IMG/VR virus record: IMGVR_UViG_3300032236_001859
Location: 124,001 to 188,000 of that record
Direction: 5' to 3' (one strand)
DNA: 64,000 nucleotides
Position numbers and translations under genes: made by a program. The notes beneath the pieces are model-generated. The model was not told the origin of the DNA, did not search any database, and was given only the letters and a program-made list of their open reading frames with translations. Shown here one piece after another: positions 2,373-52,563 of the stretch. Numbering within the stretch: the stretch's first letter is position 1; every line of letters begins with the position of its first letter.

Positions 2373-2846
2373 TCAGGGCACCTGAACGAGGTCTTCCCGG
2401 GGTTCCCTGACATCTTCAGTGATTTCGAGATCTGCGCCAGAGGTGGGCTCCGCCGCGGCGATGTCACCCTGTGGGGTCAACGCGAGCTCGATACCCTGGA
2501 TGCGTGCCAGGTTGGCGTAGAAGTTAAGGTTGACCTGGAGGGGGTGAATAACCCCGGGTTCCGGGATCCTGCCATTCTTCTCGGCACGAATCACGGAATC
2601 CCGGATGTCGGCCTGACAGCGCCTGAGGTGACGGAGGAGGAACTCCTTGGTGTCCCCGGCTTCAAAGAAGAGATCAAGGGCACCACGCTGGATGTCCTGG
2701 CGCTGCGACATCGTCCGTATATTGCAGCGGTGGTCACCAACGAAGTGGTAGACCCCGGGTCCCAGGGTGCGATTGGGTTTAATCCACGTAAGTATAACAC
2801 GCGGATATTTAACTACAACAATGGTGTGGGCGATGGACGTGTTCAT
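2373..2846 (-). CDS. Hypothetical protein
   Basis: 157-aa ORF whose start overlaps the upstream stop (ATGA). Confidence 0.65.
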   Translation of the reverse strand: MNTSIAHTIVVVKYPRVILTWIKPNRTLGPGVYHFVGDHRCNIRTMSQRQDIQRGALDLFFEAGDTKEFLLRHLRRCQADIRDSVIRAEKNGRIPEPGVIHPLQVNLNFYANLARIQGIELALTPQGDIAAAEPTSGADLEITEDVREPREDLVQVP

Positions 2847-3172
2847 TTGGCGGACTTCTTCGCAGTCTTGTGACGACTCGCCAACTTGGTCAGCGCGATG
2901 TCACCATCGAGACGGCCTGGGCGGGGTGCCGCTGCCTTGAACTGTGCTGCTGTTTTTTCCAGGAATTTATTTACGATTCCCGCTTTCTTCTCATTTTTGA
3001 CAGCTTTGGGATTGCCCAGCGCAGGGGTGATCTTGCCCTTAGCGTTGGTATCGGGCTGGGTAGGCTGCTCGGGCGGCGGGGGCGCATTGGTGCCACTCCG
3101 GGGTTTAACAGGGGTGTCGGTGTGGGCTGCGATTTTCTGTGCAGCCTTGAATAAGAGTTCACGGGGTTTCAT
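2843..3172 (-). CDS. Small basic K-x-A-motif protein (putative head internal protein)
   Basis: Start moved to MKPRELL (ATG 3172, GGAG SD, ATGA overlap). Contains FKAAQKIAAH, EKTAAQFKAAA and TKLASRHKTAKKSAK. Confidence 0.7.
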   Translation of the reverse strand: MKPRELLFKAAQKIAAHTDTPVKPRSGTNAPPPPEQPTQPDTNAKGKITPALGNPKAVKNEKKAGIVNKFLEKTAAQFKAAAPRPGRLDGDIALTKLASRHKTAKKSAK

Positions 3173-4182
3173 GGGTGCTCCGATGCGATAGGATAGTCCC
3201 GCGATGGTGGCGGACAAGTCTGGGGGGCCGGGGTGTCCTGGAGGGTCCACGTTATCTTCCCGAGATCATAGCACCTCTTGTAGCCCAGGGATGCTGCCAT
3301 CTCGAACTCAGTGGATCCAGGGTCCTGACCCCCGAGTTCCGAGATTAGGTCTCGGCGTTGTTTGGACGACTTCGCAAACCATTCACCACCCCGCCAGTAC
3401 CGATAGTCAGGTTTCGGGGTCTCGGTATCCCTGGTAAACCCGAGAGTGGCATAAACGGCACCCCCGGGCGCATAGCGTTCATCAGAGTAACTGATGACAA
3501 ACCCAGGGTGTTCCTTGCGAAACGCGGAGAGAAGTCGCGAGGCCCCTCCGGGGACAACCACCGAGGATGCGAATCTCTGGAGGAGCCATCCACCGCTGGC
3601 TCCTCTGCATGCCTCAGAATGGGTGAACGCCATTATGGCGACGACCCCATGCTCGGGGTGTGTGAGCGCATAGTTGTACTTGGCGTTCGCCTTGCCTTGA
3701 AGGTGGTAGGTTTCATAGAAGGCGTCGGCCTCAGCCTTGGGGACCTCGATGACCTCGCATTGTCGTGCACCCACCTTGACGAGGGATTCCCCGAGGCGGT
3801 AGCGGAGGATGTGCTTTAGTGCTGTCCCCCTGACCTCATCCTTCCAGAGCATGAGGGTGCGGTATCCCATGTACCTGAGATGCGTACTCTGGCGCAGTAG
3901 CCACTTCGTCGCCGTGGCATGTTTGCAGTCGTAAGTCTTCTGGATGGCATCAACATTCCAGACCTCGGGGTCAACACTGACCACTGCGAGGTCCTTTGCC
4001 AGTGCGATGACTTCGGGGTAGTAAGGCAACTGGATGGGAGACGGTGGCTCCTCGACGTGCATGGCCTTCCATGTCGAGGGTCCCGAGATCCCATACCGTT
4101 TACCAATCTTGACCACGGGTTCTCCGAGGAGTGCGTAGGCCTGCATCTCAAGAAATCGATTGGTGGGGGTTGTACGGCTCAT
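3169..4182 (-). CDS. Hef-like homing-endonuclease-family protein with N-terminal HTH-like segments and a C-terminal Mom/GNAT-like domain
   Basis: VGARQCEVIEV...FYETYHLQG...VAIMAF...LLQRFAS..VPGGASRLL...ISYSDERY...VYATLGF...PDYRY...CYDLGKITW matches the conserved C-terminal region of phage Hef-like proteins. Confidence 0.65.
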   Translation of the reverse strand: MSRTTPTNRFLEMQAYALLGEPVVKIGKRYGISGPSTWKAMHVEEPPSPIQLPYYPEVIALAKDLAVVSVDPEVWNVDAIQKTYDCKHATATKWLLRQSTHLRYMGYRTLMLWKDEVRGTALKHILRYRLGESLVKVGARQCEVIEVPKAEADAFYETYHLQGKANAKYNYALTHPEHGVVAIMAFTHSEACRGASGGWLLQRFASSVVVPGGASRLLSAFRKEHPGFVISYSDERYAPGGAVYATLGFTRDTETPKPDYRYWRGGEWFAKSSKQRRDLISELGGQDPGSTEFEMAASLGYKRCYDLGKITWTLQDTPAPQTCPPPSRDYPIASEHP

Positions 4183-5018: not shown

Positions 5019-5025
5019 GTAAGTA

Positions 5026-5078: not shown

Positions 5079-5090
5079 CCGCGTTGCATA

Positions 5091-5128: not shown

Positions 5129-5153
5129 TTGTAATACATTGAAACGCTACAGG

Positions 5154-6092
5154 TTACGCAGTAGCGATAGTTACCAATGCAACCGCTGCTGGATTGGCAA
5201 TCGTTGCCCCTCGCTCGGCATATGCGAAAAATTCGAGGTTGTATGCCCTTTTATCGACATACATTGTGGTGTCTTCAAGAACGTACGATTTTCCAAGGAA
5301 CTCTGGGGAAGCAAAGACCCAGAAGGAGCTCTCAGCCACAAGCTCGGTTTTGTTTGTCACTACCCAATTACAACCAATCAGCTTCTTCTGTTGGAAGCCA
5401 TCGACCAACATGTCTTGCGACAGGTCGCCACCGGCTTCGTCACGGGTGAACTTACTGACGTCATGGATGGTGATGTTGTTGACCAGGATGGTCACGCCGT
5501 CCAAGTGAGCGAAAGTACGTGGCAGGATCTTTTTGATCTCGAACAACGAGTTACGGGTGATGCCCGCGGGATCAACGATCTTGACGTTTTGGACGATGCC
5601 GGTTTCAGGAACGATACCGCCCTGAGGTCCGACGATGGCTTGACAAGCCGACAGCATCTTGCGGTCGAACTCGAAATCCATGTCGAGGATGGCGTTGTCC
5701 GAGATGACCTGGCGGATGTCCATACCGTAGGTACGGAGTTCCGAGGTATCCTTCGTGAACTTATGGGTCACGATACGATCGAAGTAGACCGGGTAACGGT
5801 CACCACGGAAGTAGTATTGGATGGGCTGCTGACCCAGGGGGATCGTGATGGCAGCGGGTGAGTTGGGTTCGCGTTCGACCAGCTTGACGTTCTTGTCATT
5901 GCTGAGTTGTGGGGTGAGTTCGTCATCCCCAATCTTGATCGCTGGCAGAATCTTCTCGAAGAACGAGGATTCACGGATGCGAACGCGGGTGAAGTCGGTC
6001 ACCATATCCGCTGCGGCTTTGATATGGCCCTTTTCGAGCATACCGAAGAATGCAGCATTGGACTGGGCCGCGGACAGCTTTTTCTGACTCAT
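5154..6092 (-). CDS. Major capsid protein (HK97 fold)
   Basis: 312 aa; strong SD (AAGGA) with an A/C-rich leader; followed by a terminator; sits directly downstream of protease, scaffold and decoration genes. Segments such as RIRESSFFEKILP and FDRIVTHKFTKDTSEL..Y.MDIRQVISDN resemble jumbo-phage MCPs. Confidence 0.8.
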   Translation of the reverse strand: MSQKKLSAAQSNAAFFGMLEKGHIKAAADMVTDFTRVRIRESSFFEKILPAIKIGDDELTPQLSNDKNVKLVEREPNSPAAITIPLGQQPIQYYFRGDRYPVYFDRIVTHKFTKDTSELRTYGMDIRQVISDNAILDMDFEFDRKMLSACQAIVGPQGGIVPETGIVQNVKIVDPAGITRNSLFEIKKILPRTFAHLDGVTILVNNITIHDVSKFTRDEAGGDLSQDMLVDGFQQKKLIGCNWVVTNKTELVAESSFWVFASPEFLGKSYVLEDTTMYVDKRAYNLEFFAYAERGATIANPAAVALVTIATA

Positions 6093-6808: not shown

Positions 6809-7246
6809 TCAGTTGCCTGAGGGGATGTGCTGACGGGCATGACGATCCCAGACCGCGTCCGAAGACTCGACTTGGGCTTCAGGATCCGCGACGACGCTGG
6901 CCATCTTCGGGGCACGGCTGGCGACTTCAGCAAACTTTTGCAATGCCGTGACAGCCTTGGAGTGATCCATGACTTCATTGGCAAAGGCTTCTGCGCGTTC
7001 GGGACTCGAGATCATGCCGGTTTGCAACAGGGTTGCAGCGGCGCGCTTGGCGAGTCCACGCAGATTTGCCTGCTTGGCCTGGTCGGCTTCGCTGGCAGTC
7101 TTTTGGGTTTTCTGCGCCGAGGAGACCTGGGCTTTCAGGGCTTCGATTTCACCGGCTTGTTTTTGGATGACACCCTGGGCTTGTTCCAGGGAGGATGCGA
7201 GACCATCGAGAGTGCTCGCAACTTTCTTGAGCTCATTGCCAGTCAT
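6809..7246 (-). CDS. Coiled-coil head assembly/scaffold-associated protein
   Basis: Start moved to MTGNELKKVAS (ATG 7246, 5 nt after the upstream stop). Heptad helix; motifs KKVAS, QKTAS, AKRAA. Confidence 0.6.
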   Translation of the reverse strand: MTGNELKKVASTLDGLASSLEQAQGVIQKQAGEIEALKAQVSSAQKTQKTASEADQAKQANLRGLAKRAAATLLQTGMISSPERAEAFANEVMDHSKAVTALQKFAEVASRAPKMASVVADPEAQVESSDAVWDRHARQHIPSGN

Positions 7247-7250
7247 GGGA

Positions 7251-8777
7251 TCAGGCTTTCTTGTTGGTGGAGGTTTGCGCGATTTGGATAGCAGCGGCTT
7301 TCTTGAAGATTGCAGCGCTGACACGAGCCTTGTAACTCGCGACTTTGTCCATCGCGGGCACCGGAGCGGCTTGGAGCTGCTGCAGGGCCTGGGGGTCGAG
7401 TCCCATTTCCTGGAGGACTTGCAGCAGGGCTGCTTGTTCTTCAGGGGTCTTGGCTTCGAGGCCAGCCAGGGGATCACCACTCATGGGTTCACCAGTGGGG
7501 GCGGCACCGGGGATCACAGGGGCCGCAGGAGCGACTCCAGCAGCACCGGCTTCTTCACCACCAGGGAGATGTTCGGCGTGTTCTTGGGCAGGGGTCTCGC
7601 CTTGCTCATGCTTGGACGACTCGCCTTCTTTCTCGGCGTCTTCCTGCTTCTTGCCTTCAGAGCCCTCGTGAGCTTTGCCTTCACCGGCCTCATGCTTCGC
7701 GGCTTCTTCGAGTTCCTGAGCAGTCTTGATGGCCAGATTGAATCCAAAGGCGTGCGCGGCCTTGTGCAGGGTGCGCAGCTTCTGGGGGTAATCGGGATGA
7801 CCAGGACCAACATCCAGGGCAGCAACTTTCATGGCCTGGAGGTCTTCGGGGGCGGGTTCACCACCGGCGTCGCCGCCAGGGGGAAGTGCACCAGCGGGAC
7901 CGGCACCACCAGCGGCGTCGGCAGGGGGAGCGCCAGCACCGGCGGCATCAGCGGGGGGAGCCCCTGCGTCAGCACCGGGTTGGGCGCCGTCTTGGCCACC
8001 CATCTGTTCACTCAAGGCTTGGAGTTCTTGGAGGTCTTCAGGGGACAATGCACCGCTACGGGCGGCTTCCTGAAGGATCTGTTCGGCTTGGGCGTCATCG
8101 ATCTCACCATTTTGGAGAGCAGCCATGAGCTCTTGGGCTCCGGCTTGTGCAGCACCTTGTTCGCCACCAGGGATGGCGGCAGCACCTGCGGCTGCATCTC
8201 CGCCGCCTGCGGCTTCCATCGCCTTTTTAGCGATGTATGCGCTCATGCCGGTCAGGGGCTTGGCGGCTTCAGGCTGACCGTTTGATTTTCCCAGGATACT
8301 GGCGACCTTCTGTTGGGCGGCTTCCGCATTGGCATCAACCGGCAGCTTTTCGGCGGCCGACTTCAACCACGCAGACATCTTGCGTCCAGTCGAGATGAGT
8401 TCACCAGCGGACTTCGAGAGTTCGCTCTGGGGTACGGGACCATTGTCGGCTTCACCTTTGACTTCGAGGTCGGCACCTTTGCCGCCTTCTTGGCCATCAG
8501 TGGACACCGCGGTGGCACCCTCTGTGGAGGCTTCAACACTTGCACCGGGCTTATTGGCCACGGCGCCGCCGTCAACTTTGGCCTCGGTATGCTTACCGGC
8601 CTCTTCGACGTTCTTGTTGTAGTGTTCACCTTTTTTCACGGCTTCAGTGCCGTTATCGCTGTCCAGGGGATCAGCGGGGCTCGCGGATTTGGCGAGGCCT
8701 TCGGTGGGGACTTCGGAGGCGCGTTTGATCATGAGGTCTAAATCCTCCATGATCGTGCGCTGTGTCTTTTGAGTCAT
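7251..8777 (-). CDS. Scaffold-like head protein (acidic, low-complexity, many K-x-A sites)
   Basis: 508 aa between protease and MCP; AAGGAAG SD; Ala/Gly/Pro/Glu-rich; IKRAS, AKSAS, SKSAG, LKSAA, QKVAS, MKVAA, IKTAQ, DKVAS, KKAAA. Confidence 0.6.
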   Translation of the reverse strand: MTQKTQRTIMEDLDLMIKRASEVPTEGLAKSASPADPLDSDNGTEAVKKGEHYNKNVEEAGKHTEAKVDGGAVANKPGASVEASTEGATAVSTDGQEGGKGADLEVKGEADNGPVPQSELSKSAGELISTGRKMSAWLKSAAEKLPVDANAEAAQQKVASILGKSNGQPEAAKPLTGMSAYIAKKAMEAAGGGDAAAGAAAIPGGEQGAAQAGAQELMAALQNGEIDDAQAEQILQEAARSGALSPEDLQELQALSEQMGGQDGAQPGADAGAPPADAAGAGAPPADAAGGAGPAGALPPGGDAGGEPAPEDLQAMKVAALDVGPGHPDYPQKLRTLHKAAHAFGFNLAIKTAQELEEAAKHEAGEGKAHEGSEGKKQEDAEKEGESSKHEQGETPAQEHAEHLPGGEEAGAAGVAPAAPVIPGAAPTGEPMSGDPLAGLEAKTPEEQAALLQVLQEMGLDPQALQQLQAAPVPAMDKVASYKARVSAAIFKKAAAIQIAQTSTNKKA

Positions 8778-8779: not shown

Positions 8780-10180
8780 CTACTTCCTTGGTGACAAGGG
8801 TGATGGTAACGGGGTTGCGCGCCTCGACAAGACCATGCCCTGAACGAGGGCTCCGAGCGTGGCTTCATCTGCGTTGTTATTGGGATGCACGGCGAAAGCT
8901 ACTTTGTAGTGGAGATAGAGGTCAGCAAGACCCCTACTCGCCGTGACATCAGGAGCACGACCAGCACCGGCCAACTTCACATTCGGCTGACCGGAGATTG
9001 TGGCATGGAGAACCCGTCTGGCCGGGTGGGCTCCGCGCATCGATGTCGCGTAATCCAGGGATCCCACGACATCGTCCTCAAGACGAATCGGGGTCGTGGA
9101 TTCGACGCCATCTAAAGAGTTGATTTCAACCGCTGATTTCAGGAGACCATGAAAACCTTGTTTAACAGCGAGATCATGGGCGAGTCGGACATCTGGGGAG
9201 ATCGATGCCATGGGGATGTCGACCACGAAGTCAGCGAAGTCCCGGATACCGAGGACGCATCCACGCTTGTGGAGCCAGTTCAGCATCGCGGGGGCCCCAT
9301 GGGCCTCGAATGCCTTCTTGATCTCCTTGCGAGTCTCGAGATCGAGATCACAGGGTTCTGGCCCAATATCGGCGAGCTGGGCGAGACCACCAATGCGCTT
9401 CTCAATGGTGGCCAGGCGCATCATCATCGCATACTTCGAGGAGTTCAGCTTCCGCATCGAGGTCTGTAGGGCGATCTCGAAGCCAGGGACTCCTGGGCGC
9501 TCCAGGGCAACCTTCCGCAAAGTATAACCAATGCGGTCAGCGGGTTTCCATACCGTGGATTGATCCATGTAGTACGGATTCGGATTCTTCATGTAAACTT
9601 TTTGACCATCCTTGGTGACCTCACCAAGCATGTGCTTGATGTGCTCACAGTGGTCCTTGGCCTCGGGTGCCTTGTGGTCACACACCGAGCAGACGTCATA
9701 GGCCTGCATGGATCCCATGGACACCGGGACATCCTTGCCCTCTTCGAGAGCCTGGACTTCATCTGCGTTCTTCTCGTTGTCGAGTGCTGATATCAACTCG
9801 ATGCGAGACATGGGTCCATTGTGACCCGTGAACAAGATGTCGCCCGTTTTCTTATCGGGGTCATCGTTGTCATGGTTCTTGAAGACATGCCCATGCGTCT
9901 TAAATCTGGTATGACAAGTCTTGTTGTCTTTTTCGCTGAAGCCATCGTTATTGCGGTTGTCGCCATAGCGTTCTTCATCACCAACCGCGATGGTATGTAT
10001 GATGGTCTTGCCAGGGATAGGCTTCATCTCGGCGAGTTCCTTCTGGAACAGGAGACCGCCGGCCTCCTTCGCCGTCTTCATGAACAGCTCTTTATCGAAC
10101 CCACGACTCGAGAATCTCACCAGGGTCACCTCAGGTGCCTGGAAATCATAGGTGTGTGGGGAAAGGATCTTGGCGATCAT
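8780..10180 (-). CDS. Prohead maturation protease (assemblin/HK97-like Ser protease) with Cys/His Zn-finger insertion
   Basis: Start moved to MIAKILS (10180). GHVFKNH, RIELI, VSMGS...YDVCSVCDH...CEHIK, MDQSTVWKPADRIG pattern of phage prohead proteases; located directly upstream of scaffold and MCP. Confidence 0.75.
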   Translation of the reverse strand: MIAKILSPHTYDFQAPEVTLVRFSSRGFDKELFMKTAKEAGGLLFQKELAEMKPIPGKTIIHTIAVGDEERYGDNRNNDGFSEKDNKTCHTRFKTHGHVFKNHDNDDPDKKTGDILFTGHNGPMSRIELISALDNEKNADEVQALEEGKDVPVSMGSMQAYDVCSVCDHKAPEAKDHCEHIKHMLGEVTKDGQKVYMKNPNPYYMDQSTVWKPADRIGYTLRKVALERPGVPGFEIALQTSMRKLNSSKYAMMMRLATIEKRIGGLAQLADIGPEPCDLDLETRKEIKKAFEAHGAPAMLNWLHKRGCVLGIRDFADFVVDIPMASISPDVRLAHDLAVKQGFHGLLKSAVEINSLDGVESTTPIRLEDDVVGSLDYATSMRGAHPARRVLHATISGQPNVKLAGAGRAPDVTASRGLADLYLHYKVAFAVHPNNNADEATLGALVQGMVLSRRATPLPSPLSPRK

Positions 10181-10182: not shown

Positions 10183-11184
10183 TCAGTGCCCTGTAGCCAT
10201 GTTGACGACGCCGTTGGCCGCAGTACCCGCACCCCACCCAATTCCTGCGTGGATGAGCGCATTGCCAATCCCCTTACTAGGAAGTGTGCTGCGCGCCTTG
10301 CCCAGGTTCTCTGCGTAATTGCGGAGGTTAATCGCCTTGGCGTGCTCCAGTGGCAGATTCGTCACGGGGTCCAGCCCATAACCTTTACCGAGCTGCTGTT
10401 GCAGACGCCCCGAGATCTCCAGTGCCCTGGTGTGTTCCGGGGTCAAGATCTTCTGGTTATGCCCACTGTTAAACATCAGAGTTCTGGCTTCATCTGCTTT
10501 ATCTTGAACAACCCCTGCATTACGCTCGAAGTTGGATTGCTCACCCTTTGCCTTGAACTGAAGTGGATCTTTTAGCCATGACCACGCCGTTGGACTGGTT
10601 ATTGGCTTAGCATTACCGCCACCCTTGAGGACGTCGCCCTCAGAGCTCAACTCGGCGAGAACATTCTTGGGATTCACGGCGGCATCACGTACATGGAGCT
10701 GGACGGCCTTGGAGGCCTCCTCGGGGGTCATCCCGGGAACCCCAGTGTTTCCAAGATTCCTGGCAAGGGTGTCGGCGTGAGCGCCACCCTTGGTGATCTC
10801 GTCGACAACCCCACTCGTGGACTGTTGCCGGTAGGCGTCGCCAAACGGTAGATTCTTGCGGGTTACCGGGGCCAACGCGGCGGCACCGGCACCGAGACCA
10901 GTTAGAGTCCCAGGAGCCATCCCGGTGTACTTGTCAGTGAACTTGTCGACGGGCCCCCTGTTATCACCACCAATGCGTGATCCCAGGTAATCCCCGATTT
11001 CCTTGCGGTACAGATATGCGGCGCCGAGACCAGCGGCAAGGGTGCCACTGGCAAGGGCCAGTGACAACCATTCCTTGGCACCCCAGCCCTTGTCGTCTTC
11101 CTCGTCCTCGGCGTCATCGGAGACCGGGTACACGGCTTCAGCGGCCTGCTTAGCAAAGGCGTCGTGGTCGGCATGGGTTACCAT
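10183..11184 (-). CDS. K-x-A-motif protein with predicted membrane helices (putative internal/ejection protein)
   Basis: FAKQAAEA near the N-terminus, then WLSLALASGTLAAGLGAAYLY; C-terminal glycine-zipper ALIHAGIGWGAGTAA. Confidence 0.6.
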   Translation of the reverse strand: MVTHADHDAFAKQAAEAVYPVSDDAEDEEDDKGWGAKEWLSLALASGTLAAGLGAAYLYRKEIGDYLGSRIGGDNRGPVDKFTDKYTGMAPGTLTGLGAGAAALAPVTRKNLPFGDAYRQQSTSGVVDEITKGGAHADTLARNLGNTGVPGMTPEEASKAVQLHVRDAAVNPKNVLAELSSEGDVLKGGGNAKPITSPTAWSWLKDPLQFKAKGEQSNFERNAGVVQDKADEARTLMFNSGHNQKILTPEHTRALEISGRLQQQLGKGYGLDPVTNLPLEHAKAINLRNYAENLGKARSTLPSKGIGNALIHAGIGWGAGTAANGVVNMATGH

Positions 11185-11187: not shown

Positions 11188-12687
11188 TCAGCCCTTCGCG
11201 TGGTGTTTCTGGAGTCGCATCATAACATCGGTGTCGAGGTCGCCACCACTGGCGAGCTGATCCTTGACCAGACGTCGAATCATCGAGGAGTCCGCATCAG
11301 GGTTCGTTGCCATAACAGCGTTAAAGGCTTTTACAGTTTCAGGAATCGGGCGCTGAGAAATATAGGGGTCATCCATCAGGGATGCCAGGGAGACCGCTGC
11401 ACCCGTGTTCTTGACGCGTTGCTGCCCACCGGAGCTCAAAGGCGATTTTGCGGAGACCCCGTAGTCATGTGAGGAGCCGCCATCACGGTTGCCCAGGGCA
11501 CCCCCGACGACGTCTTCAATCTTCTCACCACCCATGGCATCCTCGGGAAGCGAGGTCGCGGTGTCCGACAAATTCTTGACGTAGCCACCTGCATCCTCAG
11601 CGATCTTTGCGATCCGGGGGCCGGCTTCGGCGAGTCTGCGGTCGACTTCATTCTTGGCGGCGAGACAATGCGAGGCGTGCTTCCACAAAGTCTCCAGCGT
11701 CGAGACTGAGTCCACAAGCTCTTTCTCACGTGGGCTGCATGTCGCGATGACATCACTGGCGATCTTCATCGCGGGGGTCGCCCTGTGGTGCCCACGCTTC
11801 TCGAGGCTTCCGGTTACCCAGATGACATCGAGAGTGGCGGGGTCGACTCCAGCGCGCTTCGCCAGGGTCTCCACACGGGAGAACGCCGGGGAATCCACGC
11901 GGGAGAAGGATTCCACGATTCGAGCAAGTTTGACAAAGGCGGCATCACGGTGTTCGGAGAACTTGGTTCTCGCGGTCTCCGCGGCCACCTTCAAGTTCTG
12001 GAGTTTGATAAAAGGGTTGTCGGCGAGGCGTGAGCAATCGATGCCGTGGAGCCTGGAGTCCAGGGCTTCACGGATCCGCGAGGCTTCCATGCCGAAATCA
12101 GCGTTGACCCGGAATCCATCGATATCACAGGCCACCTTGAGGCGACCACGTTGCATGGCCATGGGGTCCACACCAAAGGCTTCACGAGCCGTCTTGATGA
12201 GTTCGGCATCCTCGGCTTCGGCGTCGGCATCACTGACTGCATCTTTGAAGTCGTCTTCTTCCTCATAGGAGGCATCGACGTCTTCGGGATCCGCTTTGCC
12301 TTCGGATTCCGCAGCAGTTTTCTTGGCACCCGGCAACTTGTTCGGGGATTCGACATCAGGGTAATCCCCTGGCTTCGTCCCATTCGCCGGCTTCTTGTTC
12401 TCGGCGTCGGGTTCCGGGAAGAGTTCCTGGGTGACCTCATCAGCGTTGGTCAGCGGAAAGGGATCCGCTTTGGCCTCGGCTTCCGAGTTCGCGAGATGGC
12501 TCAGGGTTCTTGAGTTGTTGACGGCATGGCTGACCAAGGCGACCTCTTTTGCATTGAGGTCGAACTCTTGAGCAACTTTGCGGAGCGCTGCGTTGGGAGC
12601 TGCACCATCATTCATGCCGTCGACACAGGCCTCAGCGGCCTTGATTAAGGTGGCGTGACGCCGGGGTCCCATGAGTTCAAGGCTCAT
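11188..12687 (-). CDS. K-x-A-rich helical virion protein
   Basis: 499 aa; IKAAE, RKVAQ, KKTAA, IKTAR, LKVAC, LKVAA, MKIAS, AKIAE. Confidence 0.6.
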   Translation of the reverse strand: MSLELMGPRRHATLIKAAEACVDGMNDGAAPNAALRKVAQEFDLNAKEVALVSHAVNNSRTLSHLANSEAEAKADPFPLTNADEVTQELFPEPDAENKKPANGTKPGDYPDVESPNKLPGAKKTAAESEGKADPEDVDASYEEEDDFKDAVSDADAEAEDAELIKTAREAFGVDPMAMQRGRLKVACDIDGFRVNADFGMEASRIREALDSRLHGIDCSRLADNPFIKLQNLKVAAETARTKFSEHRDAAFVKLARIVESFSRVDSPAFSRVETLAKRAGVDPATLDVIWVTGSLEKRGHHRATPAMKIASDVIATCSPREKELVDSVSTLETLWKHASHCLAAKNEVDRRLAEAGPRIAKIAEDAGGYVKNLSDTATSLPEDAMGGEKIEDVVGGALGNRDGGSSHDYGVSAKSPLSSGGQQRVKNTGAAVSLASLMDDPYISQRPIPETVKAFNAVMATNPDADSSMIRRLVKDQLASGGDLDTDVMMRLQKHHAKG

Positions 12688-13619: not shown

Positions 13620-13820
13620 TTACTTCTGAGCAGCCTGTGCAGCAGCGAAGGCGTCGAGGCGTTCATGTGCAGCCTTGGCGAGACCCTTGACTTGGTCATC
13701 ACTGAGTCCCATGCCACGCGCGGCTTCGTAGAAACCGAGGTCAACGGCGTTGGCGCCATCGACTTCGTCGGCGGCTGCCAGCTTTTTGAGGAGGACGTCT
13801 GAGGCAGACTTGGATAACAT
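13620..13820 (-). CDS. Small K-x-A-motif protein
   Basis: Start moved to MLSKSASDV (AAAGGA SD); 66 aa with SKSAS, KKLAA, AKAAH. Confidence 0.7.
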   Translation of the reverse strand: MLSKSASDVLLKKLAAADEVDGANAVDLGFYEAARGMGLSDDQVKGLAKAAHERLDAFAAAQAAQK

Positions 13821-13854
13821 GGTGGATTCCTTTTCTGGGAAATTGAAGACGGCC

Positions 13855-37564: not shown

Positions 37565-38428
37565 TCACTGAGCGTCAAGCCCTGCGACATAGGCGTCCAG
37601 CTCGGGACCTGAGATATCAGTTTGTAACACACGATCCCAGAGCACACGTACTCCATGGAGATTCCGCTGCGCCGCCGGGGTTTCCCCCTCGATGTCGGCA
37701 TGTGGGATAAGGGAGTCGAGGAGCTCTGGGTTTGTCTCCTGCGTCGAGACTATCCAGTTGTGATTTCCTGCAGTGTTGGTATCAAAGGGATGCAGCAAGG
37801 TGTAATCGGCGAAGAACAGACTGCGAGGTGCGACCCCCGCGGTGCCGAGATCCTGAAGCAAAGTCTTCATGGGATCAATGTTGGGGCGCCCAATGATGTT
37901 GATCCAAATGTTCGGGGTAATCGCTGCGCATGCCTTGAAGAAGTCGACTTGATCTCCGGTGATCAGTGATTTACCATCATAGGCATCGTGAAGAATAAAG
38001 TCGTAGTGGTACCTATCACGTGGGCACCTCGCGATAAGGGGAATCAAGGCGAGGGCGTCCGCGGTGAAAACACGGAGCCGGCCGGATTCAATGGCGGCGT
38101 TGACCTCAGGGAACCCTTGCTTGCACAGGTGTACCGCGACAGGATCGATCTCGATGACGTCGAGGCGAACCCCGGGGAAATTGGCGAGTACCGCGATGGC
38201 GCCGGCACCACTACCCAGGCCGACCATGAGCCCCCTGCCATTGTGGTTCATTACCGCTGCGGCCAGCCATCCCGCGGTGTACGGAGACGCCGAGACCACC
38301 CCAGGCCCCCCGTGTTCAGATGGGGGCTCCAGAAATGAGGCGCCCTGGACCTGCCCATTGATTCGGAGCTGCCGGGCACCATGGACGTCGACGACATCGA
38401 CGACTCCGAACATGCCCTGAGCCATCAT
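37565..38428 (-). CDS. Spermidine synthase-like / class I SAM-dependent transferase
   Basis: LRINGQVQG, LMVGLGSGAG (motif I), LDVIEIDPVAV, FTADAL, YDFILHDAYDG. Confidence 0.75.
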   Translation of the reverse strand: MMAQGMFGVVDVVDVHGARQLRINGQVQGASFLEPPSEHGGPGVVSASPYTAGWLAAAVMNHNGRGLMVGLGSGAGAIAVLANFPGVRLDVIEIDPVAVHLCKQGFPEVNAAIESGRLRVFTADALALIPLIARCPRDRYHYDFILHDAYDGKSLITGDQVDFFKACAAITPNIWINIIGRPNIDPMKTLLQDLGTAGVAPRSLFFADYTLLHPFDTNTAGNHNWIVSTQETNPELLDSLIPHADIEGETPAAQRNLHGVRVLWDRVLQTDISGPELDAYVAGLDAQ

Positions 38429-39720: not shown

Positions 39721-41804
39721 GACTGGGACTCCTGTGGAGGCATCGGTGCAGTCTGTGCGACTTCTTCTGGGTTCTGGATCTCCGGGGTCTCAGGCTTCGC
39801 CGCCTTCGACTTCCGGATCGCACGATGGATCACACGTGCCCTGGCACGATCAAGATTACGGAATGGCTTATTGATGGCTAGACCCATGGATCCGTAGACC
39901 TGTTTGAGGACTTGGTCATGGGGGAGCCACTCACCGGGGAAATCCGCGGGTGCCTCGCCTTCACCGAGATGAAAGGCGTAGTCGTAGCCGTGGTACCCAG
40001 GCTCCGCGACACCCTCATCAGGAAGAACGCGGACGTTGGATGAGTAAGGTGCAGGGGCCCCCTTACCCTCGGTGGGGAAATGAAACCGACGGTTGCTGTC
40101 ACGTCGGACCAATACTTTACCTTCGGGATCCAAATAGACGTACTCGGTCTTAGGAAGCAGCGCGGCAGCATCTGCCTGCTTCTTCAATGGCATCTCGGTG
40201 TGCGTGGCCAGTACGTCATCTCCGACCCCGCCTGTGAAAAACTCGGTCTCATCAAAGTAGGTGACCCCTGCGGCTTCAGCGGCACCCTCGTCATCGGGGG
40301 AGTTACCAACCATGCAGATCACGGGATCCAGAGAGAACGCTTCTTCGGCGTATTCGATCATCGCTGGAGACGGCTTCCGGCCGGCGTCGTCTTCATCGGT
40401 ACAGAACACGATGTCGTCGATCTCGGGGAGGAGCTCAAGGGTTTCATCATTGAAGTCGAGGACATCGGGGAGCGTGTTCGTCCCCATGACACTGCGGTTG
40501 GTTACCCCAACGATGCGGACCCCTGCAGCCTTAAACTTCTTGAGGAGTTCTTTGACCCCTGGTTTGATCTTCTGGGTGGCCTCGAGGCCGGCGTCGTCAT
40601 CCCATTCGGCGACAACGGTACCATCGAGGTCAACGAGGAGTCCTGGTGCCGACTCAGGCGTCTTGTCCTGGAACTTATGGGTTCTCATGGACCCCGAGAT
40701 CTCCGCGGCATGCTTCTCGGCGAGATTGTTGGTGTGCTTGGCCATCGTGAAGTCCCCGTTGGTTGGGGAATCCCCGCTGCGGAGGACAACCAGAACTCTG
40801 CCATCCGGGAATCTCCGGACTTCATCGAAGTAGTGGCCATGGGCGGCCTCGAGATCCTGGAGCGCCTTCACGAAGACCTTGGGGTCCTTGGGGGCATAGA
40901 TGCGACGAAGACTGTTACGGTACAGTGCCCAGCCGTGATGCTGCCGGGGCACACTGGCGAGTTTCTTACCCTTGAGCTCGGGATCCTTCTTCGCCATGTC
41001 CCTGGCGGCCTCGACGAGTTCGAGGCGGACCTCGTTGGCTCTCTTGGCCCAGTCGTTCTTAGCAATGAGTTCTTTGAGCCTGGTAATCAGCGTAGCAAAG
41101 GGGATCACATCGAAATCCTCCCGATCCGGGTGTGTGGTCCCCAGTTTGCCGTCATGGACCCCAGTGAAGAAATATGTGCGTTCGCCATCGAATGCGGAGT
41201 CATCCCAGAAGTCGTTGACCCCACTTGGCCAAATCGATTCTACGATCTCACGAGTCTCCGGAGAAATGATCTTGAGATCGGCTTCCTCGATGGCTTCCCG
41301 GATCGCGGCGAGTAACGGGGGTTCGCCGTCATCGATGCCGCCACCGGGGAACAGGATGTAGTCGCCCTTGTCGATGCCGACGACGCCATCCTTATCGAAG
41401 GCGATGAGTTCGGATCTCGGTCGCAGGAGTTGCGATGGGGAACCCTCGTGCTTATCGGGAGTGGGTTCGTTCTCAGCGGCTTTCTTGCCGAGACCCCTGG
41501 CGAAGCTGTGATCCCTGCGTTGTTTCGCCAAGGCGGCCTCATCAGGTTCGACATCCTTGGGTTTCGCCGGCAGCATCTTCTTCGCGTTGGTCCACACCTT
41601 CTCCGCAGGAGATGGGAGGTCGTGGTCCTCTGAGGTCCCCCTGCAGTCGCCACCACTGAACAGTTCAAGAAAGGTTTTGCCCTCGACCATGTGGGCATTG
41701 GTTGCCTTGACAGGATTCCCACCCGTTGGCGTCGCCACAGGTGTGTTGGTCACGGGGCGATCACTACCCCGCCCCGGAGATGGAATCTTGGTCTCCGCTC
41801 GCAT
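39717..41804 (-). CDS. Multidomain enzyme: NUDIX hydrolase + pterin-carbinolamine-dehydratase-like + HAD phosphatase + degenerate NUDIX-like domain
   Basis: Nudix box FPGGGIDDGEPPLLAAIREAIEEADL. PCD-like segment GWALYRNSLRRIY...LEAAHGHYFD...VLVVLRSG..PTNGDFTMAKHTNNL. HAD motifs LLVDLDGT, VTNRS, RKPSPAMI, MVGNSPDDEGAAEAAGV. Confidence 0.8.
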   Translation of the reverse strand: MRAETKIPSPGRGSDRPVTNTPVATPTGGNPVKATNAHMVEGKTFLELFSGGDCRGTSEDHDLPSPAEKVWTNAKKMLPAKPKDVEPDEAALAKQRRDHSFARGLGKKAAENEPTPDKHEGSPSQLLRPRSELIAFDKDGVVGIDKGDYILFPGGGIDDGEPPLLAAIREAIEEADLKIISPETREIVESIWPSGVNDFWDDSAFDGERTYFFTGVHDGKLGTTHPDREDFDVIPFATLITRLKELIAKNDWAKRANEVRLELVEAARDMAKKDPELKGKKLASVPRQHHGWALYRNSLRRIYAPKDPKVFVKALQDLEAAHGHYFDEVRRFPDGRVLVVLRSGDSPTNGDFTMAKHTNNLAEKHAAEISGSMRTHKFQDKTPESAPGLLVDLDGTVVAEWDDDAGLEATQKIKPGVKELLKKFKAAGVRIVGVTNRSVMGTNTLPDVLDFNDETLELLPEIDDIVFCTDEDDAGRKPSPAMIEYAEEAFSLDPVICMVGNSPDDEGAAEAAGVTYFDETEFFTGGVGDDVLATHTEMPLKKQADAAALLPKTEYVYLDPEGKVLVRRDSNRRFHFPTEGKGAPAPYSSNVRVLPDEGVAEPGYHGYDYAFHLGEGEAPADFPGEWLPHDQVLKQVYGSMGLAINKPFRNLDRARARVIHRAIRKSKAAKPETPEIQNPEEVAQTAPMPPQESQS

Positions 41805-52000: not shown

Positions 52001-52093
52001 CTCCAGCGTGCTCGTCGCGATAGGATTTGTTGCGGAGACTCGACGCAGCTGCCTGCCGTCAAAGAATACCGGCTTCTGAGGAGTGCTTGGCAT
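49073..52093 (-). CDS. Tail fibre protein with N-terminal DUF2793-like domain
   Basis: TPPGSPSAEQRWI...PTGAWFGHPNALA..RDGAWVFTPAAEG (DUF2793-like); three ST.TGAL.V.GG.GIGG repeats; common phage fibre C-terminal domain (TLAFSN...NFPANTRWSGG...GVDII...DGGVTW). Confidence 0.75.
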   Translation of the reverse strand: MPSTPQKPVFFDGRQLRRVSATNPIATSTLETDVVTTDGLHPFVANIAGIAATADAHLTTRQVVDRRIADGFWGGPVQAITNTPPGSPSAEQRWITGTLPTGAWFGHPNALAAYRDGAWVFTPAAEGVFVFNRATHSYVHYTGSAWAPILGTGTVTSVGLVLPPEFSITFSPVTTLGDLSAEWAVQSPGLVFAGPSDPLGSSAVPAFRALVETDIPSLSWNHIGSDLPTTLSGYGITDGALNGAVGSSGLTMNTARVLGRFSADPGAIEEISIGTGLNLSALGVLSCTITAALATGLVGFGGGDGILTGSTNFSYNSTLATGGLTIANTTASISAVTGALKVAGGIGAGGDIFAAGTLNSTSTATTDSTTPGALNLTGSIRTLYGTLGHLTGTVYGIYDSVTLNPLSSSIGAFYSQYHSIALTGAEDFSIAVGENTTLTDTKTAGTVNSIIGYRTSLSFNCAGSTVGAASLFRGNWSYTAGTITTGYGLYLPSITGATTNYAIYTGTGLVTLGDTSVAVGATGVSALNMVGGIKQVISYAPNATVDRTARYLEVNITPTVSRNGRYMGDTVSQRLYGGYNFGVIYGYRADLTVSTTAGTLSGFYGIDSEFYMDTAGGTCTTAALFYGSLGGSAGTLTTAYGLLLEDITFGQTNYAIQTGLGLVRFGDTTVSTTAANGALVVTGGVGIGGALNVGGALTAGGVGTLGGLKVLATGITAPAAPAGTIAQVINGNGNAGVTRVLADVAMGIGGGYAVFAGRACRGTLTAPSALQAGDEITNLSAWGYGATGYSSAARGFVSIFTAENWTDAAQGTRIGLWTTTPGTILTTEKVRIWGDGGLQIGGAFSASPGAGALIVTSAAASVSTLTGSITSAGGMGLLGSIYAGGDVSVGGTLIIKNVNEPVNAIGNTGAGTITINCLTATRITMTVTGAVTLAFSNLPASGVSKTVVLHITNGGSQTFNFPANTRWSGGIAAVLTASGVDIIGMTTLDGGVTWDAIPMSLNAKVP

Positions 52094-52563
52094 TATTCGT
52101 CCTCACTGCTGTCTCGGCTCAGGAACTTGTTAAGAAGATATGCGGAGCCCAGGCCAAGGCCGGCGCCAGCTGCGGTGCCCCCTGCGGCGATCCCAGTGGT
52201 CTCCATGGGGGTGCCTTCGCCATAACGAGCATGCCGTCTCGCGAGTTCACCACCGAGGCCGGCGCCGAGTTCAGTACCTGCACCACCGAGAACCCCCGTG
52301 ATCGCACCCTTCATGGTATCCCGAAGTCTGTCACCCTTCTTCGCAGTCAGGTACTTGTAGGCACCGAGGCCGAGGCCACCGATGAGAGCACCCTTCCATG
52401 GCATCCCCATGCCCAGGGATTCCGCGAGACCGACACCTGGTGTCGGGTTGGGGGTCGGGAGATCATAAACTGGTACGGGTGGGCGAGGTGGTTGTGCCAG
52501 CAGTGGAGTCGCCTCTGCGGCGACTTTAACAAGACTGGTGGCCAGGAAGACGTCAAGTGTCAT
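52093..52563 (-). CDS. Small K-x-A glycine-zipper membrane protein
   Basis: LVKVAAE; GALIGGLGLGAY; GAITGVLGGAG; GGTAAGAGLGLGSAY. Confidence 0.7.
   Translation of the reverse strand: MTLDVFLATSLVKVAAEATPLLAQPPRPPVPVYDLPTPNPTPGVGLAESLGMGMPWKGALIGGLGLGAYKYLTAKKGDRLRDTMKGAITGVLGGAGTELGAGLGGELARRHARYGEGTPMETTGIAAGGTAAGAGLGLGSAYLLNKFLSRDSSEDE

What the first reader, a model, noticed from the sequence alone, without database searches (positions are those of the whole stretch)
2843..52563. Genome-wide K-x-A-(A/S) signature in head-region proteins: a putative prohead-protease processing code for a large virion cargo
Seen: about 20 proteins carry repeated [hydrophobic/K]-K-x-A-[A/S/other small] motifs (KVAA, KTAA, KQAA, KLAS, KSAS, KIAS, KRAS, KKAA). 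They cluster near N-termini (SKVAA 18041 ORF, TKVAA 20284, KKVAA 38425, VKVAA 52093, AKQAA 10183, RKLAA 28823) and between domains, and include HIKAAAD at about residue 24 of the MCP. By eye they are sparse in the tail fibres, RNR, XRE and spermidine synthase. Established: prohead proteases cut short motifs in many head proteins (T4 gp21 at L/I-x-E, phiKZ-type at S/A/G-x-E), and herpes assemblin cuts after Ala (x-x-A|S). Inference: this phage uses a Lys-x-Ala specificity, and the motif marks which proteins are packaged and matured, including membrane-active and enzymatic cargo.
Basis: partly seen in the sequence, partly recalled or inferred. Interest (0 to 1): 0.85.

Follow-up and report, generated by a model that had tools for sequence, protein, structure and literature searches.

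The report
Conserved Lys-x-Ala tag on phage head proteins
An uncultured ~216-kb phage and its relatives carry a short, strongly conserved Lys-x-Ala-(Ala/Ser) tag in their capsid-assembly proteins, most likely the cutting or docking signal of the phage's own capsid-maturation protease; this specificity has not been described before and can be tested in two cultured relatives.

Summary
The pattern is real and not a composition artefact. K-x-A-[AS] occurs 53 times against 22 expected. K.AA is the most enriched of all 8000 gapped tripeptides. The excess survives shuffling within 10-residue windows, is specific (R.A[AS], K.G[AS], K.S[AS] and [SAG].E are flat), and is coded by 47 different 12-mers, so it is a peptide signal. 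Eleven ORFs carry it within their first 25 residues (1.4 expected).

It recurs at 3-5x in six diverged relatives, Salmonella phage Arash, Vibrio phage D69 and Bacillus phage G, but not in Rhodococcus phage E3. Motif K and A are about twice as conserved as other K and A. The protease has two invariant K-x-A sites in low-confidence linkers flanking its catalytic core. The capsid protein keeps K25 and A27 in about 86% of 132 family representatives, just before the confident HK97 fold.

Best reading: a recognition code of the prohead protease, with short N-terminal propeptides. No cleavage has been shown and the cut position is unknown.

The "marks all packaged cargo" claim is not supported. Enrichment is 3.4x next to the protease but only 1.6-1.7x around the portal, and the virion RNA polymerase subunits have no conserved site.

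The parts
8780..10180 (-). Prohead (capsid maturation) protease homologue, 466 aa. The catalytic core is about residues 55-216, with invariant H103 and S154 and a Cys cluster C164/C167/C178. A helical C-terminal domain follows.
   Evidence: phrog_18299 'head maturation protease' at E 5.5e-7. tblastn hits to annotated prohead proteases of Rhodococcus phage E3 and Gordonia phages, to phage G gp19 and to Arash gp222. 34-sequence alignment A1. AF2 pLDDT 83; best meaningful Foldseek hits are T4 gp21 5jbl_B (prob 0.66, TMt 0.51) and HSV-1 protease 8bq1.
10067..10078 (-). Protease site 1, K35-T-A37-K. K is invariant in 34/34 homologues and A in 33/34, inside an otherwise variable N-terminal segment. 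Candidate N-terminal autoprocessing site.
   Evidence: The AF2 block for residues 31-40 has mean pLDDT 60.
9503..9514 (-). Protease site 2, K223-V-A225-L. K and A are invariant in 34/34, directly after the catalytic core. Candidate C-terminal autoprocessing site.
   Evidence: Residues 217-230 have pLDDT below 50 in the AF2 model.
8894..8905 (-). Protease C-terminal 'Y-x-x-Y-K-V-A-F' element (K426 in 32/34, Y425 in 34/34), in a confident helix. It resembles the leader 'ALARFK[VL]A' of small ORFs in the distant relative L009.
5154..6092 (-). Major capsid protein, HK97 fold, 312 aa. Site K25-A-A27-A lies at 6009-6020. A cut after A27 would leave 285 aa.
   Evidence: AF2 pLDDT 92.3, with residues 1-30 at only 57-69. 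Foldseek hit to D3 9ous_A at 4e-12 and to HK97 1ohg. K25 is kept in 114/132 and A27 in 115/132 family representatives while neighbouring positions vary.
7251..8777 (-). Ala-rich scaffold-like protein, 508 aa (20.9% Ala), with eight K.A[AS] matches (two of them overlap): residues 18, 30, 139, 157, 317, 478, 492/493.
   Evidence: 8 against 2.0 expected. Sites are retained in 3-5 of 5 orthologues while the flanks diverge.
6809..7246 (-). 145-aa helical protein (start corrected to ATG 7246). N-terminal 'ELKKVAST' plus three internal sites.
   Evidence: The orthologue N-termini read IKKAAE, LKQAAE, LKQAAD, IKTAAD and LKKAAD.
10183..11184 (-). 333-aa protein: N-terminal AFAKQAAEA (site 11140-11151), then an acidic stretch, then a hydrophobic segment.
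   Evidence: Orthologues start MSFAK[AQL]AA[ED].
11188..12687 (-). 499-aa head-module protein with conserved sites at residues 16, 123, 233, 308 and 336.
   Evidence: 4 K.A[AS] against 1.0 expected. Conservation shown.
13620..13823 (-). 67-aa protein (start corrected) with two N-terminal sites, KSAS at residue 5 and KLAA at residue 14.
   Evidence: Orthologues keep K[VIL]AA[AV][DE].
13855..16107 (-). 750-aa head-module protein with 5 sites (residues 145, 226, 507, 534, 569).
   Evidence: 5 against 0.49 expected. Sites 226, 507 and 569 are kept in 5/5 orthologues.
18041..19096 (-). 351-aa protein with a hydrophobic leader ending ...LCSKVAAT (site 19046-19057) and a C-terminal TM-like segment at 297-320.
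   Evidence: The positional orthologue in L004 starts ...LLLCAVLRKSAAIV.
20284..21021 (-). 245-aa glycine-zipper protein with leader ...LLTKVAAAE (site 20974-20985).
   Evidence: Weak Pfam Gly-zipper hits.
38425..39720 (-). 431-aa protein with leader MSPAQIMLFYLTKKVAAD (site 39670-39681) and coiled, tape-measure-like repeats.
   Evidence: Homologue P0097 is only 34% identical overall but keeps the leader...IMLFYLTRKVAAS.
52093..52563 (-). 156-aa protein upstream of a tail-fibre-like gene, with leader ...SLVKVAAEA (site 52516-52527).
   Evidence: Conservation in relatives was not tested.
2843..3172 (-). 109-aa Lys/Ala-rich protein (start corrected) with 4 sites, the first at residue 13.
   Evidence: 4 against 0.54 expected. 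Positional counterparts in L004-L007 start ...LRKSAY...LQKKSAAG...LAKRASE and ...LTKTAAN.
39717..41804 (-). 695-aa NUDIX + HAD hydrolase with sites at residues 107, 281 and 364, that is, before and between the two enzyme domains.
   Evidence: Pfam NUDIX at 151-239 and HAD at 394-513. 3 against 0.71 expected. Orthologues in L014-L016 have 3 sites each.
26888..27658 (-). 256-aa protein with 3 sites (residues 75, 145, 168).
   Evidence: 3 against 0.59 expected.
21031..26886 (-). Virion-type multisubunit RNA polymerase beta/beta'-N fusion carrying an intein. Listed as a counter-example: it is not enriched and has no conserved N-terminal site.
   Evidence: Pfam Rpb2_6, Rpb1_2, Intein_splicing and LAGLIDADG. 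1 site against 1.7 expected. The relatives' N-termini (MADFLD.. and similar) lack K.A.

Best explanation
K-x-A-[A/S], in extended form L-x-K-x-A-[A/S]-[E/D], is the short linear signal by which the phage's own prohead protease (8780-10180, assemblin/T4-gp21-like) recognises head-assembly proteins.

Proposed sequence of events (inferred, not shown):
1. The protease, the scaffold-like proteins, the capsid protein and a set of small or membrane-active internal proteins co-assemble into the prohead.
2. The protease frees its catalytic core by cutting at its own K35 and K223 linker sites.
3. It removes about 27 residues from the capsid protein.
4. It chops the scaffold and core proteins at their many internal sites so that the fragments can leave.
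5. It trims 5-25-residue N-terminal leaders from internal proteins. These leaders may double as capsid-targeting sequences, as in T4.

The most likely scissile bond is after the invariant Ala (K-x-A|A/S, assemblin-like). A cut after the acidic residue at +4 is the main alternative.
For: 1. Statistics. The motif is the top-ranked enriched pattern, robust to local shuffles and residue-specific. It is coded by 47 of 49 distinct 12-mers.
2. Replication. It is 3-5x enriched in the protease-flanking genes of L004-L009, in Arash (28 against 10.9), in Vibrio phage D69 (30 against 9.9) and in phage G at 30% GC (21 against 5.1). It is absent from Rhodococcus phage E3 (3 against 4.2).
3. Selection. Motif K is conserved at 0.71 against 0.36 for other K (p=1e-5). 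Motif A is conserved at 0.76 against 0.42 (p=2e-6). 33 orthologous K-x-A columns sit in variable flanks.
4. Protease. K35/A37 and K223/A225 are invariant and lie in low-pLDDT linkers on either side of the catalytic core. This is the arrangement of autoprocessing sites reported for phiKZ gp175 and SPN3US gp245 (PMC5694885).
5. Capsid protein. K25 and A27 are kept in about 86% of 132 representatives at 28-77% identity. They sit at the border between the low-confidence N-terminus and the confident HK97 fold. The product after a cut would be 285 aa, about the length of the HK97 mature-head chains that the model matches (280-282 residues).
6. Scaffold. The scaffold-like protein has multiple conserved sites.
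7. Leaders. They are 5-25 aa long, similar to the T4 and SPN3US targeting propeptides (PMC5694885). The leader is conserved where the rest of the protein has diverged to 34% identity.
8. Host range. The phages infect very different hosts (Salmonella, Vibrio, Lysinibacillus), which argues for a phage-encoded rather than a host-encoded reader of the motif.
Against: There is no experimental cleavage data for any member. The Arash virion proteomics reports up to 100% coverage for several motif-rich proteins and gives no peptide-level data.

The protease assignment rests on weak profile and fold matches: Foldseek E 0.37, no Pfam hit and no PDB sequence hit.

Some conserved K-x-A sites lie in confident helices (protease K249 and K426), where cutting is less likely.

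The relatives are phylogenetically related, so the replicates are not fully independent.

The acidic residue at +4 (E 3.2x) and the K/E i,i+4 spacing would also fit a helix-stabilising or docking role.
Confidence: 0.6

Rival explanations
1. The motif is a docking or targeting peptide that is not cut. On this reading it is a short amphipathic element (L at -2, K, A, A, E) that binds the scaffold, the capsid interior or the protease C-terminal domain and so recruits proteins into the prohead, like encapsulin cargo-loading peptides.
For: The motif has a strong N-terminal bias. It has an amphipathic pattern with L at -2 and E at +4. The protease C-terminal helix carries a related conserved 'YKVAF' element that resembles the leaders of L009 small ORFs. 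Some leaders place K at residue 3-5, leaving almost no propeptide.
Against: The motif is also present in the capsid protein itself, in the two disordered linkers that flank the protease core, and many times inside scaffold-like proteins. That is the typical distribution of cleavage sites, not of a single cargo tag. The two readings are not mutually exclusive, since the T4 targeting sequence is both tag and propeptide.
Confidence: 0.2
2. The motif marks a Glu/Asp-type cleavage site of the T4/phiKZ kind. On this reading the real determinant is A-[AS]-[ED] with the cut after the acidic residue, and the upstream Lys is only an extended subsite.
For: After K.A, E at +4 is 3.2x enriched and D 1.6x. 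K.A[AS][DE] occurs 15 times against 2.3 expected. All characterised relatives of this protease fold in giant phages cut after Glu (PMC5694885).
Against: A.E and [SAG].E are not enriched on their own (85 against 82; 178 against 188). The acidic residue is present at only about 30% of sites and is not conserved at the two invariant protease sites or in many leaders such as KVAATL, KSAAIV and KTAANR. In the 67-aa protein family it shifts by one residue (K-x-A-A-A-D), while K and A stay fixed.
Confidence: 0.12
3. There is no specific function. The pattern is a by-product of Ala/Lys-rich helical or low-complexity head proteins, or of hidden paralogy.
For: Several motif-rich proteins are 14-22% Ala and helical. 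Related helix-like patterns (EA.K, KK.A) are also somewhat enriched.
Against: The enrichment survives shuffles within 10-residue windows. R.A[AS], E.A[AS], K.G[AS] and K.S[AS] are flat. There is no enrichment in the Ala-rich Rhodococcus phage E3 head module or in the window's other ORFs. Motif residues are about twice as conserved as other K and A. All-against-all BLAST finds no paralogy among the motif-bearing proteins. The motif is equally enriched in phage G at 30% GC.
Confidence: 0.05
4. A host protease reads the motif, for example signal peptidase I at A-x-A, and the hydrophobic leaders are secretion signals.
For: Four leaders (18041, 20284, 38425, 52093) have a short hydrophobic run followed by V-A-A or A-A-A, and their proteins have TM-like or glycine-zipper segments.
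Against: The hydrophobic runs are only 6-8 residues and mostly lack a basic n-region (read directly from the sequences). Most motif sites have no hydrophobic stretch at all: the capsid protein, the scaffold-like protein, the protease linkers and the 145-aa and 333-aa proteins. The motif is shared by phages of Gram-negative and Gram-positive hosts.
Confidence: 0.03

Closest known systems
T4 prohead protease gp21 with capsid-targeting sequences (CTS) on internal proteins
   Same: A phage-encoded protease of the assemblin-like fold sits in the head module. Short N-terminal leaders of 10-20 aa end in the protease site. The scaffold or core is cut at many sites. The protease processes itself. T4 gp21 (5jbl) is the best meaningful Foldseek hit.
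   Different: T4 cuts after Glu in (L/I)-x-E (PMC5694885). Here the conserved residues are Lys and Ala two positions apart, and [LI].E is only marginally enriched (103 against 82). The protease is twice as long, with a Cys cluster and a large helical C-terminal domain. Cleavage has not been shown.
phiKZ gp175 / 201phi2-1 / SPN3US gp245 prohead proteases (S/A/G-x-E or A-x-E code) in giant phages with virion RNA polymerase
   Same: These are giant phages with a packaged multisubunit RNA polymerase and many internal head proteins. The protease autocleaves C-terminal to its catalytic domain. A short motif is shared by many head proteins, and paralogues share identical leaders (PMC5694885).
   Different: The motif differs: [SAG].E and A.E are not enriched, and Lys is essential. 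The capsid protein is a minimal 312-aa HK97 fold rather than a large phiKZ-type protein. The RNA polymerase is encoded as a large beta/beta' fusion. The only sequence relatives among cultured phages are Arash, Vibrio D69-like phages and phage G.
Herpesvirus assemblin (maturational protease), consensus (V/L/I)-x-A|S
   Same: Ala at the presumed P1 position and Ala/Ser at P1'. The protease fold class is related: HSV-1 protease 8bq1 is among the top Foldseek hits. Release and maturation sites flank the catalytic domain and scaffold.
   Different: Here P3 would be Lys rather than a branched hydrophobic residue. The similarity of specificity rests on my recollection of the herpesvirus consensus, and the scissile bond here is unknown. 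The sequence relationship is undetectable.
Encapsulin cargo-loading peptides
   Same: A short conserved terminal peptide on otherwise unrelated proteins, associated with an HK97-fold shell.
   Different: Encapsulin peptides are usually C-terminal, are not cleaved, and do not occur in the shell protein or at multiple internal sites.

Membership tests
Prohead / capsid maturation protease (assemblin-like fold; T4 gp21, HK97 gp4, phiKZ gp175 class) | Gene lies in the head-assembly module, adjacent to the scaffold and capsid protein genes | tested here: met
   The order protease, scaffold-like protein, 145-aa protein, 203-aa protein, capsid protein is conserved in the window and in L004-L008, Arash and D69.
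Prohead / capsid maturation protease (assemblin-like fold; T4 gp21, HK97 gp4, phiKZ gp175 class) | Sequence or profile similarity to known prohead proteases | tested here: met
   phrog_18299 'head maturation protease' at E 5.5e-7. tblastn hits to Rhodococcus phage E3 gp77 'prohead protease' (5e-7) and to Gordonia 'capsid maturation protease' genes. There is no Pfam hit and no PDB sequence hit, so the match is weak.
Prohead / capsid maturation protease (assemblin-like fold; T4 gp21, HK97 gp4, phiKZ gp175 class) | Assemblin-like fold of the catalytic domain | tested here: inconclusive
   A Foldseek search with the full-length model gave T4 gp21 5jbl_B at prob 0.66, TMt 0.51 and E 0.37, and HSV-1 protease 8bq1 at E 0.68. 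The catalytic domain alone was not searched.
Prohead / capsid maturation protease (assemblin-like fold; T4 gp21, HK97 gp4, phiKZ gp175 class) | Conserved catalytic His followed by Ser | tested here: met
   H103 and S154 are invariant in 34 homologues at 26-57% identity. Their assignment as the catalytic pair is inferred, not verified structurally.
Prohead / capsid maturation protease (assemblin-like fold; T4 gp21, HK97 gp4, phiKZ gp175 class) | Proteolytic activity on head proteins and on itself | not testable with these tools
   Needs expression and mass spectrometry.
Glu-specific giant-phage cleavage code (T4 L/I-x-E; phiKZ/SPN3US S/A/G-x-E) | Glu at P1 of a three-residue motif shared by the processed head proteins | tested here: inconclusive
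   [SAG].E occurs 178 times against 188 expected, A.E 85 against 82, and [LI].E 103 against 82 (p=0.007). E is 3.2x enriched at +4 after K.A but is absent from most invariant sites. The sequence data favour K-x-A as the determinant, but the scissile bond cannot be read from sequence.
T4-type capsid-targeting sequence | N-terminal leader of about 10-20 aa ending in the protease motif, on several unrelated internal proteins | tested here: met
   11 ORFs have the motif in residues 5-25. The leaders are conserved in orthologues. There is no paralogy outside the leader.
T4-type capsid-targeting sequence | The leader is necessary and sufficient for packaging into the prohead and is removed on maturation | not testable with these tools
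   Needs fusion-protein packaging experiments.
Sec signal peptide / signal peptidase I site | Basic n-region, hydrophobic core of at least 10 residues, then A-x-A | tested here: not met
   The hydrophobic runs are 6-8 residues in the four hydrophobic leaders and absent from the other sites (read directly from the sequences).
HK97-fold major capsid protein with a removable N-terminal propeptide | HK97 fold | tested here: met
   AF2 pLDDT 92.3. Foldseek hits to D3 (4e-12) and to HK97 heads (3.5e-11 and weaker), all at prob 1.00.
HK97-fold major capsid protein with a removable N-terminal propeptide | The N-terminal segment is cleaved in the mature head | not testable with these tools
   Indirect evidence only: residues 1-30 have low confidence, K25 and A27 are conserved in about 86% of the family, and most distant homologues align only from residue 20-25 onward.

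The most novel reading that the evidence does not exclude
A large, almost entirely uncultured lineage of 160-500-kb phages uses a previously undescribed Lys-x-Ala|(Ala/Ser) specificity class of prohead protease. The lineage includes the window's clade, Salmonella phage Arash, Vibrio D69-like phages and Bacillus phage G. Very short N-terminal L-x-K-x-A leaders would serve as a combined capsid-targeting and cleavage tag. If so, part of the internal virion proteome of these phages could be predicted from sequence alone, and foreign proteins could be directed into their capsids.
Probability: 0.45. Interest if true: 0.65.

Novelty: new variant of a known kind. Interest (0 to 1): 0.55.

Why it matters
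Prohead-protease cleavage codes are known experimentally for only a few phage groups, and in giant phages all known ones cut after Glu. A different code that can be read from sequence, shared by hundreds of uncultured jumbo-phage genomes, would do three things. It would let annotators recognise scaffold, core and propeptide-bearing internal proteins in genomes where about 80% of genes have no annotation. It would give exact mass predictions for mature capsid proteins. It would link the assemblin-type Ala|Ser specificity of herpesviruses to a tailed-phage lineage. It is directly testable, because two cultured phages (Arash and G) show the same signal and already have virion mass-spectrometry data sets that could be searched again.

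Tried and rejected
- Megablast of 20 kb against INPHARED found no match. Relatives had to be found through proteins.
- Pfam and PDB sequence or profile searches with the protease returned nothing useful.
- The Foldseek search with the whole 466-aa model is diluted by the helical C-terminal domain, so the protease hits are only suggestive.
- The Arash paper (PMC10585845) was read for cleavage evidence. It has only protein-level coverage, 116 'virion' proteins, and a supplement that is a feature table.
- The phage G multi-omics paper (PMC12484599) has no processing data. The phage G cryo-EM paper PMC7316594 is not held.
- Two full-text searches for prohead-protease cleavage motifs found only Glu-type motifs. 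This is a limited search, not proof that the specificity is new.
- A DNA-word explanation was rejected: 47 distinct 12-mers with mixed codons.
- A paralogy explanation was rejected.
- An N-terminal K-x-A on the large RNA polymerase (corrected start, 'MLGALKGAFD') was considered and dropped, because relatives lack it.
- The site at residue 14 of the ribonucleotide reductase (55227-58649) is treated as possibly chance, since one such hit among 16 non-head ORFs is unremarkable.
- The homologue search for ORF 38425 returned only 2 proteins, because low-complexity words swamped the candidate list.

Full report
**What the window is.**
The 64-kb window is almost entirely minus-strand coding, 57% GC and has no tRNA genes. 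It is part of IMG/VR contig IMGVR_UViG_3300032236_001859, which is 216 kb.

It encodes:
- an HK97-fold capsid protein, 5154-6092 (AF2 pLDDT 92; Foldseek to D3 and HK97 at about 1e-11);
- a prohead-protease homologue, 8780-10180;
- an Ala-rich scaffold-like protein, 7251-8777;
- a portal, 34495-36375;
- a multisubunit RNA polymerase, split into a beta/beta'-N fusion with an intein (21031-26886) and a beta'-C part (16137-18041);
- a NUDIX+HAD enzyme, 39717-41804;
- Lys-poor tail-fibre-like giants, and a ribonucleotide reductase with an intein.

There is no DNA-level match in INPHARED. By protein, the only cultured relatives are Salmonella phage Arash, Vibrio phages D69/D181/D148 and, for the protease core only, Bacillus phage G and actinophages. 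Homologue searches show a large uncultured clade on contigs of 160-215 kb: 95 protease hits, more than 200 portal hits and 778 capsid-protein hits.

Yes.

| Test | Observed | Expected |
|---|---|---|
| K.A[AS], per-protein shuffles | 53 | 22.1 (sd 4.5) |
| K.A[AS], shuffles inside 10-50-residue windows | 49 | about 21.5 |
| K.AA in a blind scan of all a.bc patterns (ranks first) | 37 | 14.1 |
| L.K.A, head-region ORFs | 32 | 7.2 |
| K.A[AS][DE], head-region ORFs | 15 | 2.3 |

The local-shuffle result means local Ala/Lys richness does not explain the excess.

The signal is residue-specific. R.A[AS], E.A[AS], K.G[AS], K.S[AS], A.E and the phiKZ-type [SAG].E all sit at expectation.

The 49 sites are coded by 47 different 12-mers with mixed Lys and Ala codons, so the signal is in the peptide and not in the DNA. 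All-against-all BLAST finds no paralogy that could inflate the count.

Eleven ORFs have the motif within their first 25 residues, typically at residue 12-14, against 1.4 expected. Three of these rely on start codons that I corrected from orthologue comparison (6809-7246, 13620-13823, 2843-3172).

**Where the enrichment is.**
It is graded.

| Region | Observed | Expected | Note |
|---|---|---|---|
| 2843-21021, around the protease | 33 | 9.6 | 3.4x |
| 21031-42526, RNA polymerase to beyond the portal | 15 | 8.9 | p=0.035 |
| Remaining 16 ORFs | 5 | 3.3 | not significant |

The tail-fibre-like proteins have only 1-2% Lys, so their 'sparseness' carries little information.

**Replication and conservation.**

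| Source | Observed | Expected |
|---|---|---|
| Six protease-centred loci, protease 39-58% identical (L004-L009) | 27-44 | 8-11.5 |
| Arash head module (concentrated in gp220, gp222 protease, gp223, gp225) | 28 | 10.9 |
| Vibrio phage D69 | 30 | 9.9 |
| Bacillus phage G, 30% GC (K.AS among its top patterns) | 21 | 5.1 |
| Rhodococcus phage E3 (protease core about equally distant) | 3 | 4.2 |
| Three portal-centred loci (L014-L016), pooled | 30 | 19.0 (p=0.01) |

Phage G also has recurrent 'MKRLI.K.A' N-termini.

In orthologue alignments, Lys of the motif is conserved at 0.71 against 0.36 for other Lys (p=1e-5). The Ala is conserved at 0.76 against 0.42 (p=2e-6). Thirty-three K-x-A columns are kept while their flanks vary.

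The pooled logo over 756 K.A sites is L(-2)-x-K-[V/Q/I]-A-[A/S]-[E/D].

**The three most telling cases.**
1. The protease. In 34 homologues at 26-57% identity, K35 and A37 are invariant within a variable N-terminal stretch. K223 and A225 are invariant immediately after the catalytic core. In the AF2 model both lie in low-confidence segments: the block for residues 31-40 averages pLDDT 60, and residues 217-230 are below 50. Autocleavage just C-terminal to the catalytic domain is what was found for phiKZ gp175 and SPN3US gp245 (PMC5694885).
2. The capsid protein. Among 132 representatives clustered at 50% identity (28-77% identical to the query), K25 is kept in 114 and A27 in 115, while positions 24, 26 and 28 vary. 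Many distant homologues align only from residue 20-25 onward. Residues 1-30 are the only low-confidence part of the model. A cut after A27 leaves 285 residues, about the length of the mature HK97 chains that the model matches (280-282 residues).
3. The scaffold-like protein. It has eight K.A[AS] matches at seven positions, most retained in all orthologues between diverging low-complexity linkers.

In addition, the leader of ORF 38425 is nearly unchanged in a homologue that is otherwise only 34% identical.

**Mechanism proposed.**
The simplest account is that K-x-A-[A/S] is the recognition signal of the phage's prohead protease. The protease would free itself at its two linker sites, trim the capsid protein, fragment the scaffold and core proteins, and remove short N-terminal leaders from internal proteins. 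Several of those internal proteins have glycine-zipper or TM-like segments. The leaders may also target proteins into the prohead, as in T4.

What is shown: the motif exists, it is under selection, and it sits where processing sites are expected. What is inferred: that it is cut, by this protease, and at which bond.

I favour a cut after the invariant Ala. K and A are the fixed residues, the next residue is small at most sites, and the acidic residue at +4 is present in only about 30% of sites and can shift by one position. A cut after that acidic residue, which would make the site an A-x-E site with an extended Lys subsite, cannot be excluded.

**Rivals.**
- An uncleaved docking motif (0.2). 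It is compatible with the N-terminal bias and the amphipathic pattern. It explains poorly the sites in the capsid protein, the protease linkers and the scaffold interior.
- A Glu-type cleavage site (0.12), discussed above.
- A compositional or helical by-product (0.05). The controls above contradict it.
- Host signal peptidase (0.03). It fails on leader anatomy and on host diversity.

The idea that the motif marks which proteins are packaged is not supported as stated.
- The RNA polymerase subunits are the most abundant non-capsid proteins in Arash virions. Here they are not enriched.
- Their N-termini in relatives have no K-x-A.
- The 1891-aa protein is at expectation (4 against 3.3).
- Portal-side enrichment is modest.

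The NUDIX+HAD enzyme does carry three sites placed before and between its domains, and its orthologues also have three each. Some enzymatic cargo may therefore be processed.

**Novelty.**
Two full-text searches found only Glu-type motifs for giant-phage proteases, and none of the papers on Arash or phage G discusses processing. Within that limited search, a Lys-x-Ala code appears undescribed. Conceptually it is a new variant of a known kind of system: prohead-protease maturation with targeting propeptides. It is directly testable in Arash and phage G.

Noticed in passing
window 21031-26886 (-), 55227-58649 (-); relatives P0048, P0050, P0058, P0065, P0081, P0302; L005 1001-4015: Inteins are common in this clade's core genes. 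The RNA polymerase beta/beta' fusion has an intein with a LAGLIDADG domain (residues about 616-1032 of the long ORF), and the ribonucleotide reductase has a LAGLIDADG domain. In relatives the protease, the portal (about 950-aa versions) and the beta'-C subunit carry intein or LAGLIDADG domains.
   Followed up: partly
window 3169-4182 (-) and 4179-5018 (-): Two homing-endonuclease-like genes (HNH, and a double endonuclease VII) sit next to the capsid protein gene. Endonuclease VII genes occur at different places in L005, L006 and L008, which suggests mobile insertions in the head module.
   Followed up: no
window 8780-10180 (-), residues 162-181: The protease catalytic domain contains an invariant D162, C164, C167, C178 cluster ('DVCSxCGHKAPTxxDHCxHI') that looks like a zinc knuckle. 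This is unusual for prohead proteases, and its role is unknown.
   Followed up: no
L009 1229-1669, 1678-1878, 17095-17409, 17620-17985, 17982-18716: In the most distant relative, five small ORFs share an N-terminal 'A-L-A-R-[FY]-K-[VL]-A-[DNW]' element at residues 12-35. It resembles the conserved 'Y-x-x-Y-K-V-A-F' near the C-terminus of the protease.
   Followed up: partly
L012 (Bacillus phage G) 9813-10079, 13931-14245, 26094-26609, 7400-7807, 10212-12158: Several phage G head-region proteins start 'MKRLI.K..' (gp13 and gp38 continue to K-x-A; gp17 does not). gp9 has 'LSKVAAA' at residue 20. The portal gp14 has 'AKQAAS' at residue 17.
   Followed up: partly
window 13620-13823 (residues 18-53), 28092-28820 (residues 118-151), 39717-41804 (residues 243-287): A weakly similar module of about 35 residues ('..NAV.LG[FY].E[AG]AR..GL.D..') is shared by three otherwise unrelated proteins and is followed by a K-x-A site in each. 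It may be a small interaction domain.
   Followed up: no
window 26886, 13823, 3172, 7246, 10180: The mechanical ORF starts are too long for five genes. Orthologue comparison and gene packing place the real starts at these coordinates. For example, the RNA polymerase ATG at 26886 lies one base after the upstream stop.
   Followed up: yes
window 38425-39720 (-) against P0097: This leader-bearing protein is only 34% identical to its counterpart on a 72,854-bp contig, apparently the one (L002) whose protease is 97% identical. It is therefore a hypervariable gene within an otherwise near-identical head module.
   Followed up: no
window 43669-49071, 49073-52093, 59474-62842 (-): The three giant Lys-poor (0.9-2% K) proteins are mutual distant paralogues by BLAST (E about 1e-11). 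They have tail-fibre-like termini.
   Followed up: no
window 19316-20233 (-) and orthologues in L004, L006, L007: A Pro/Gly/Ala-rich protein has a conserved N-terminal 'RL[FLV][KQ]R[AG]...K-x-A-F-[VI]-P' element. This shows that the residue after K-x-A can be Phe, as in the protease C-terminus.
   Followed up: no
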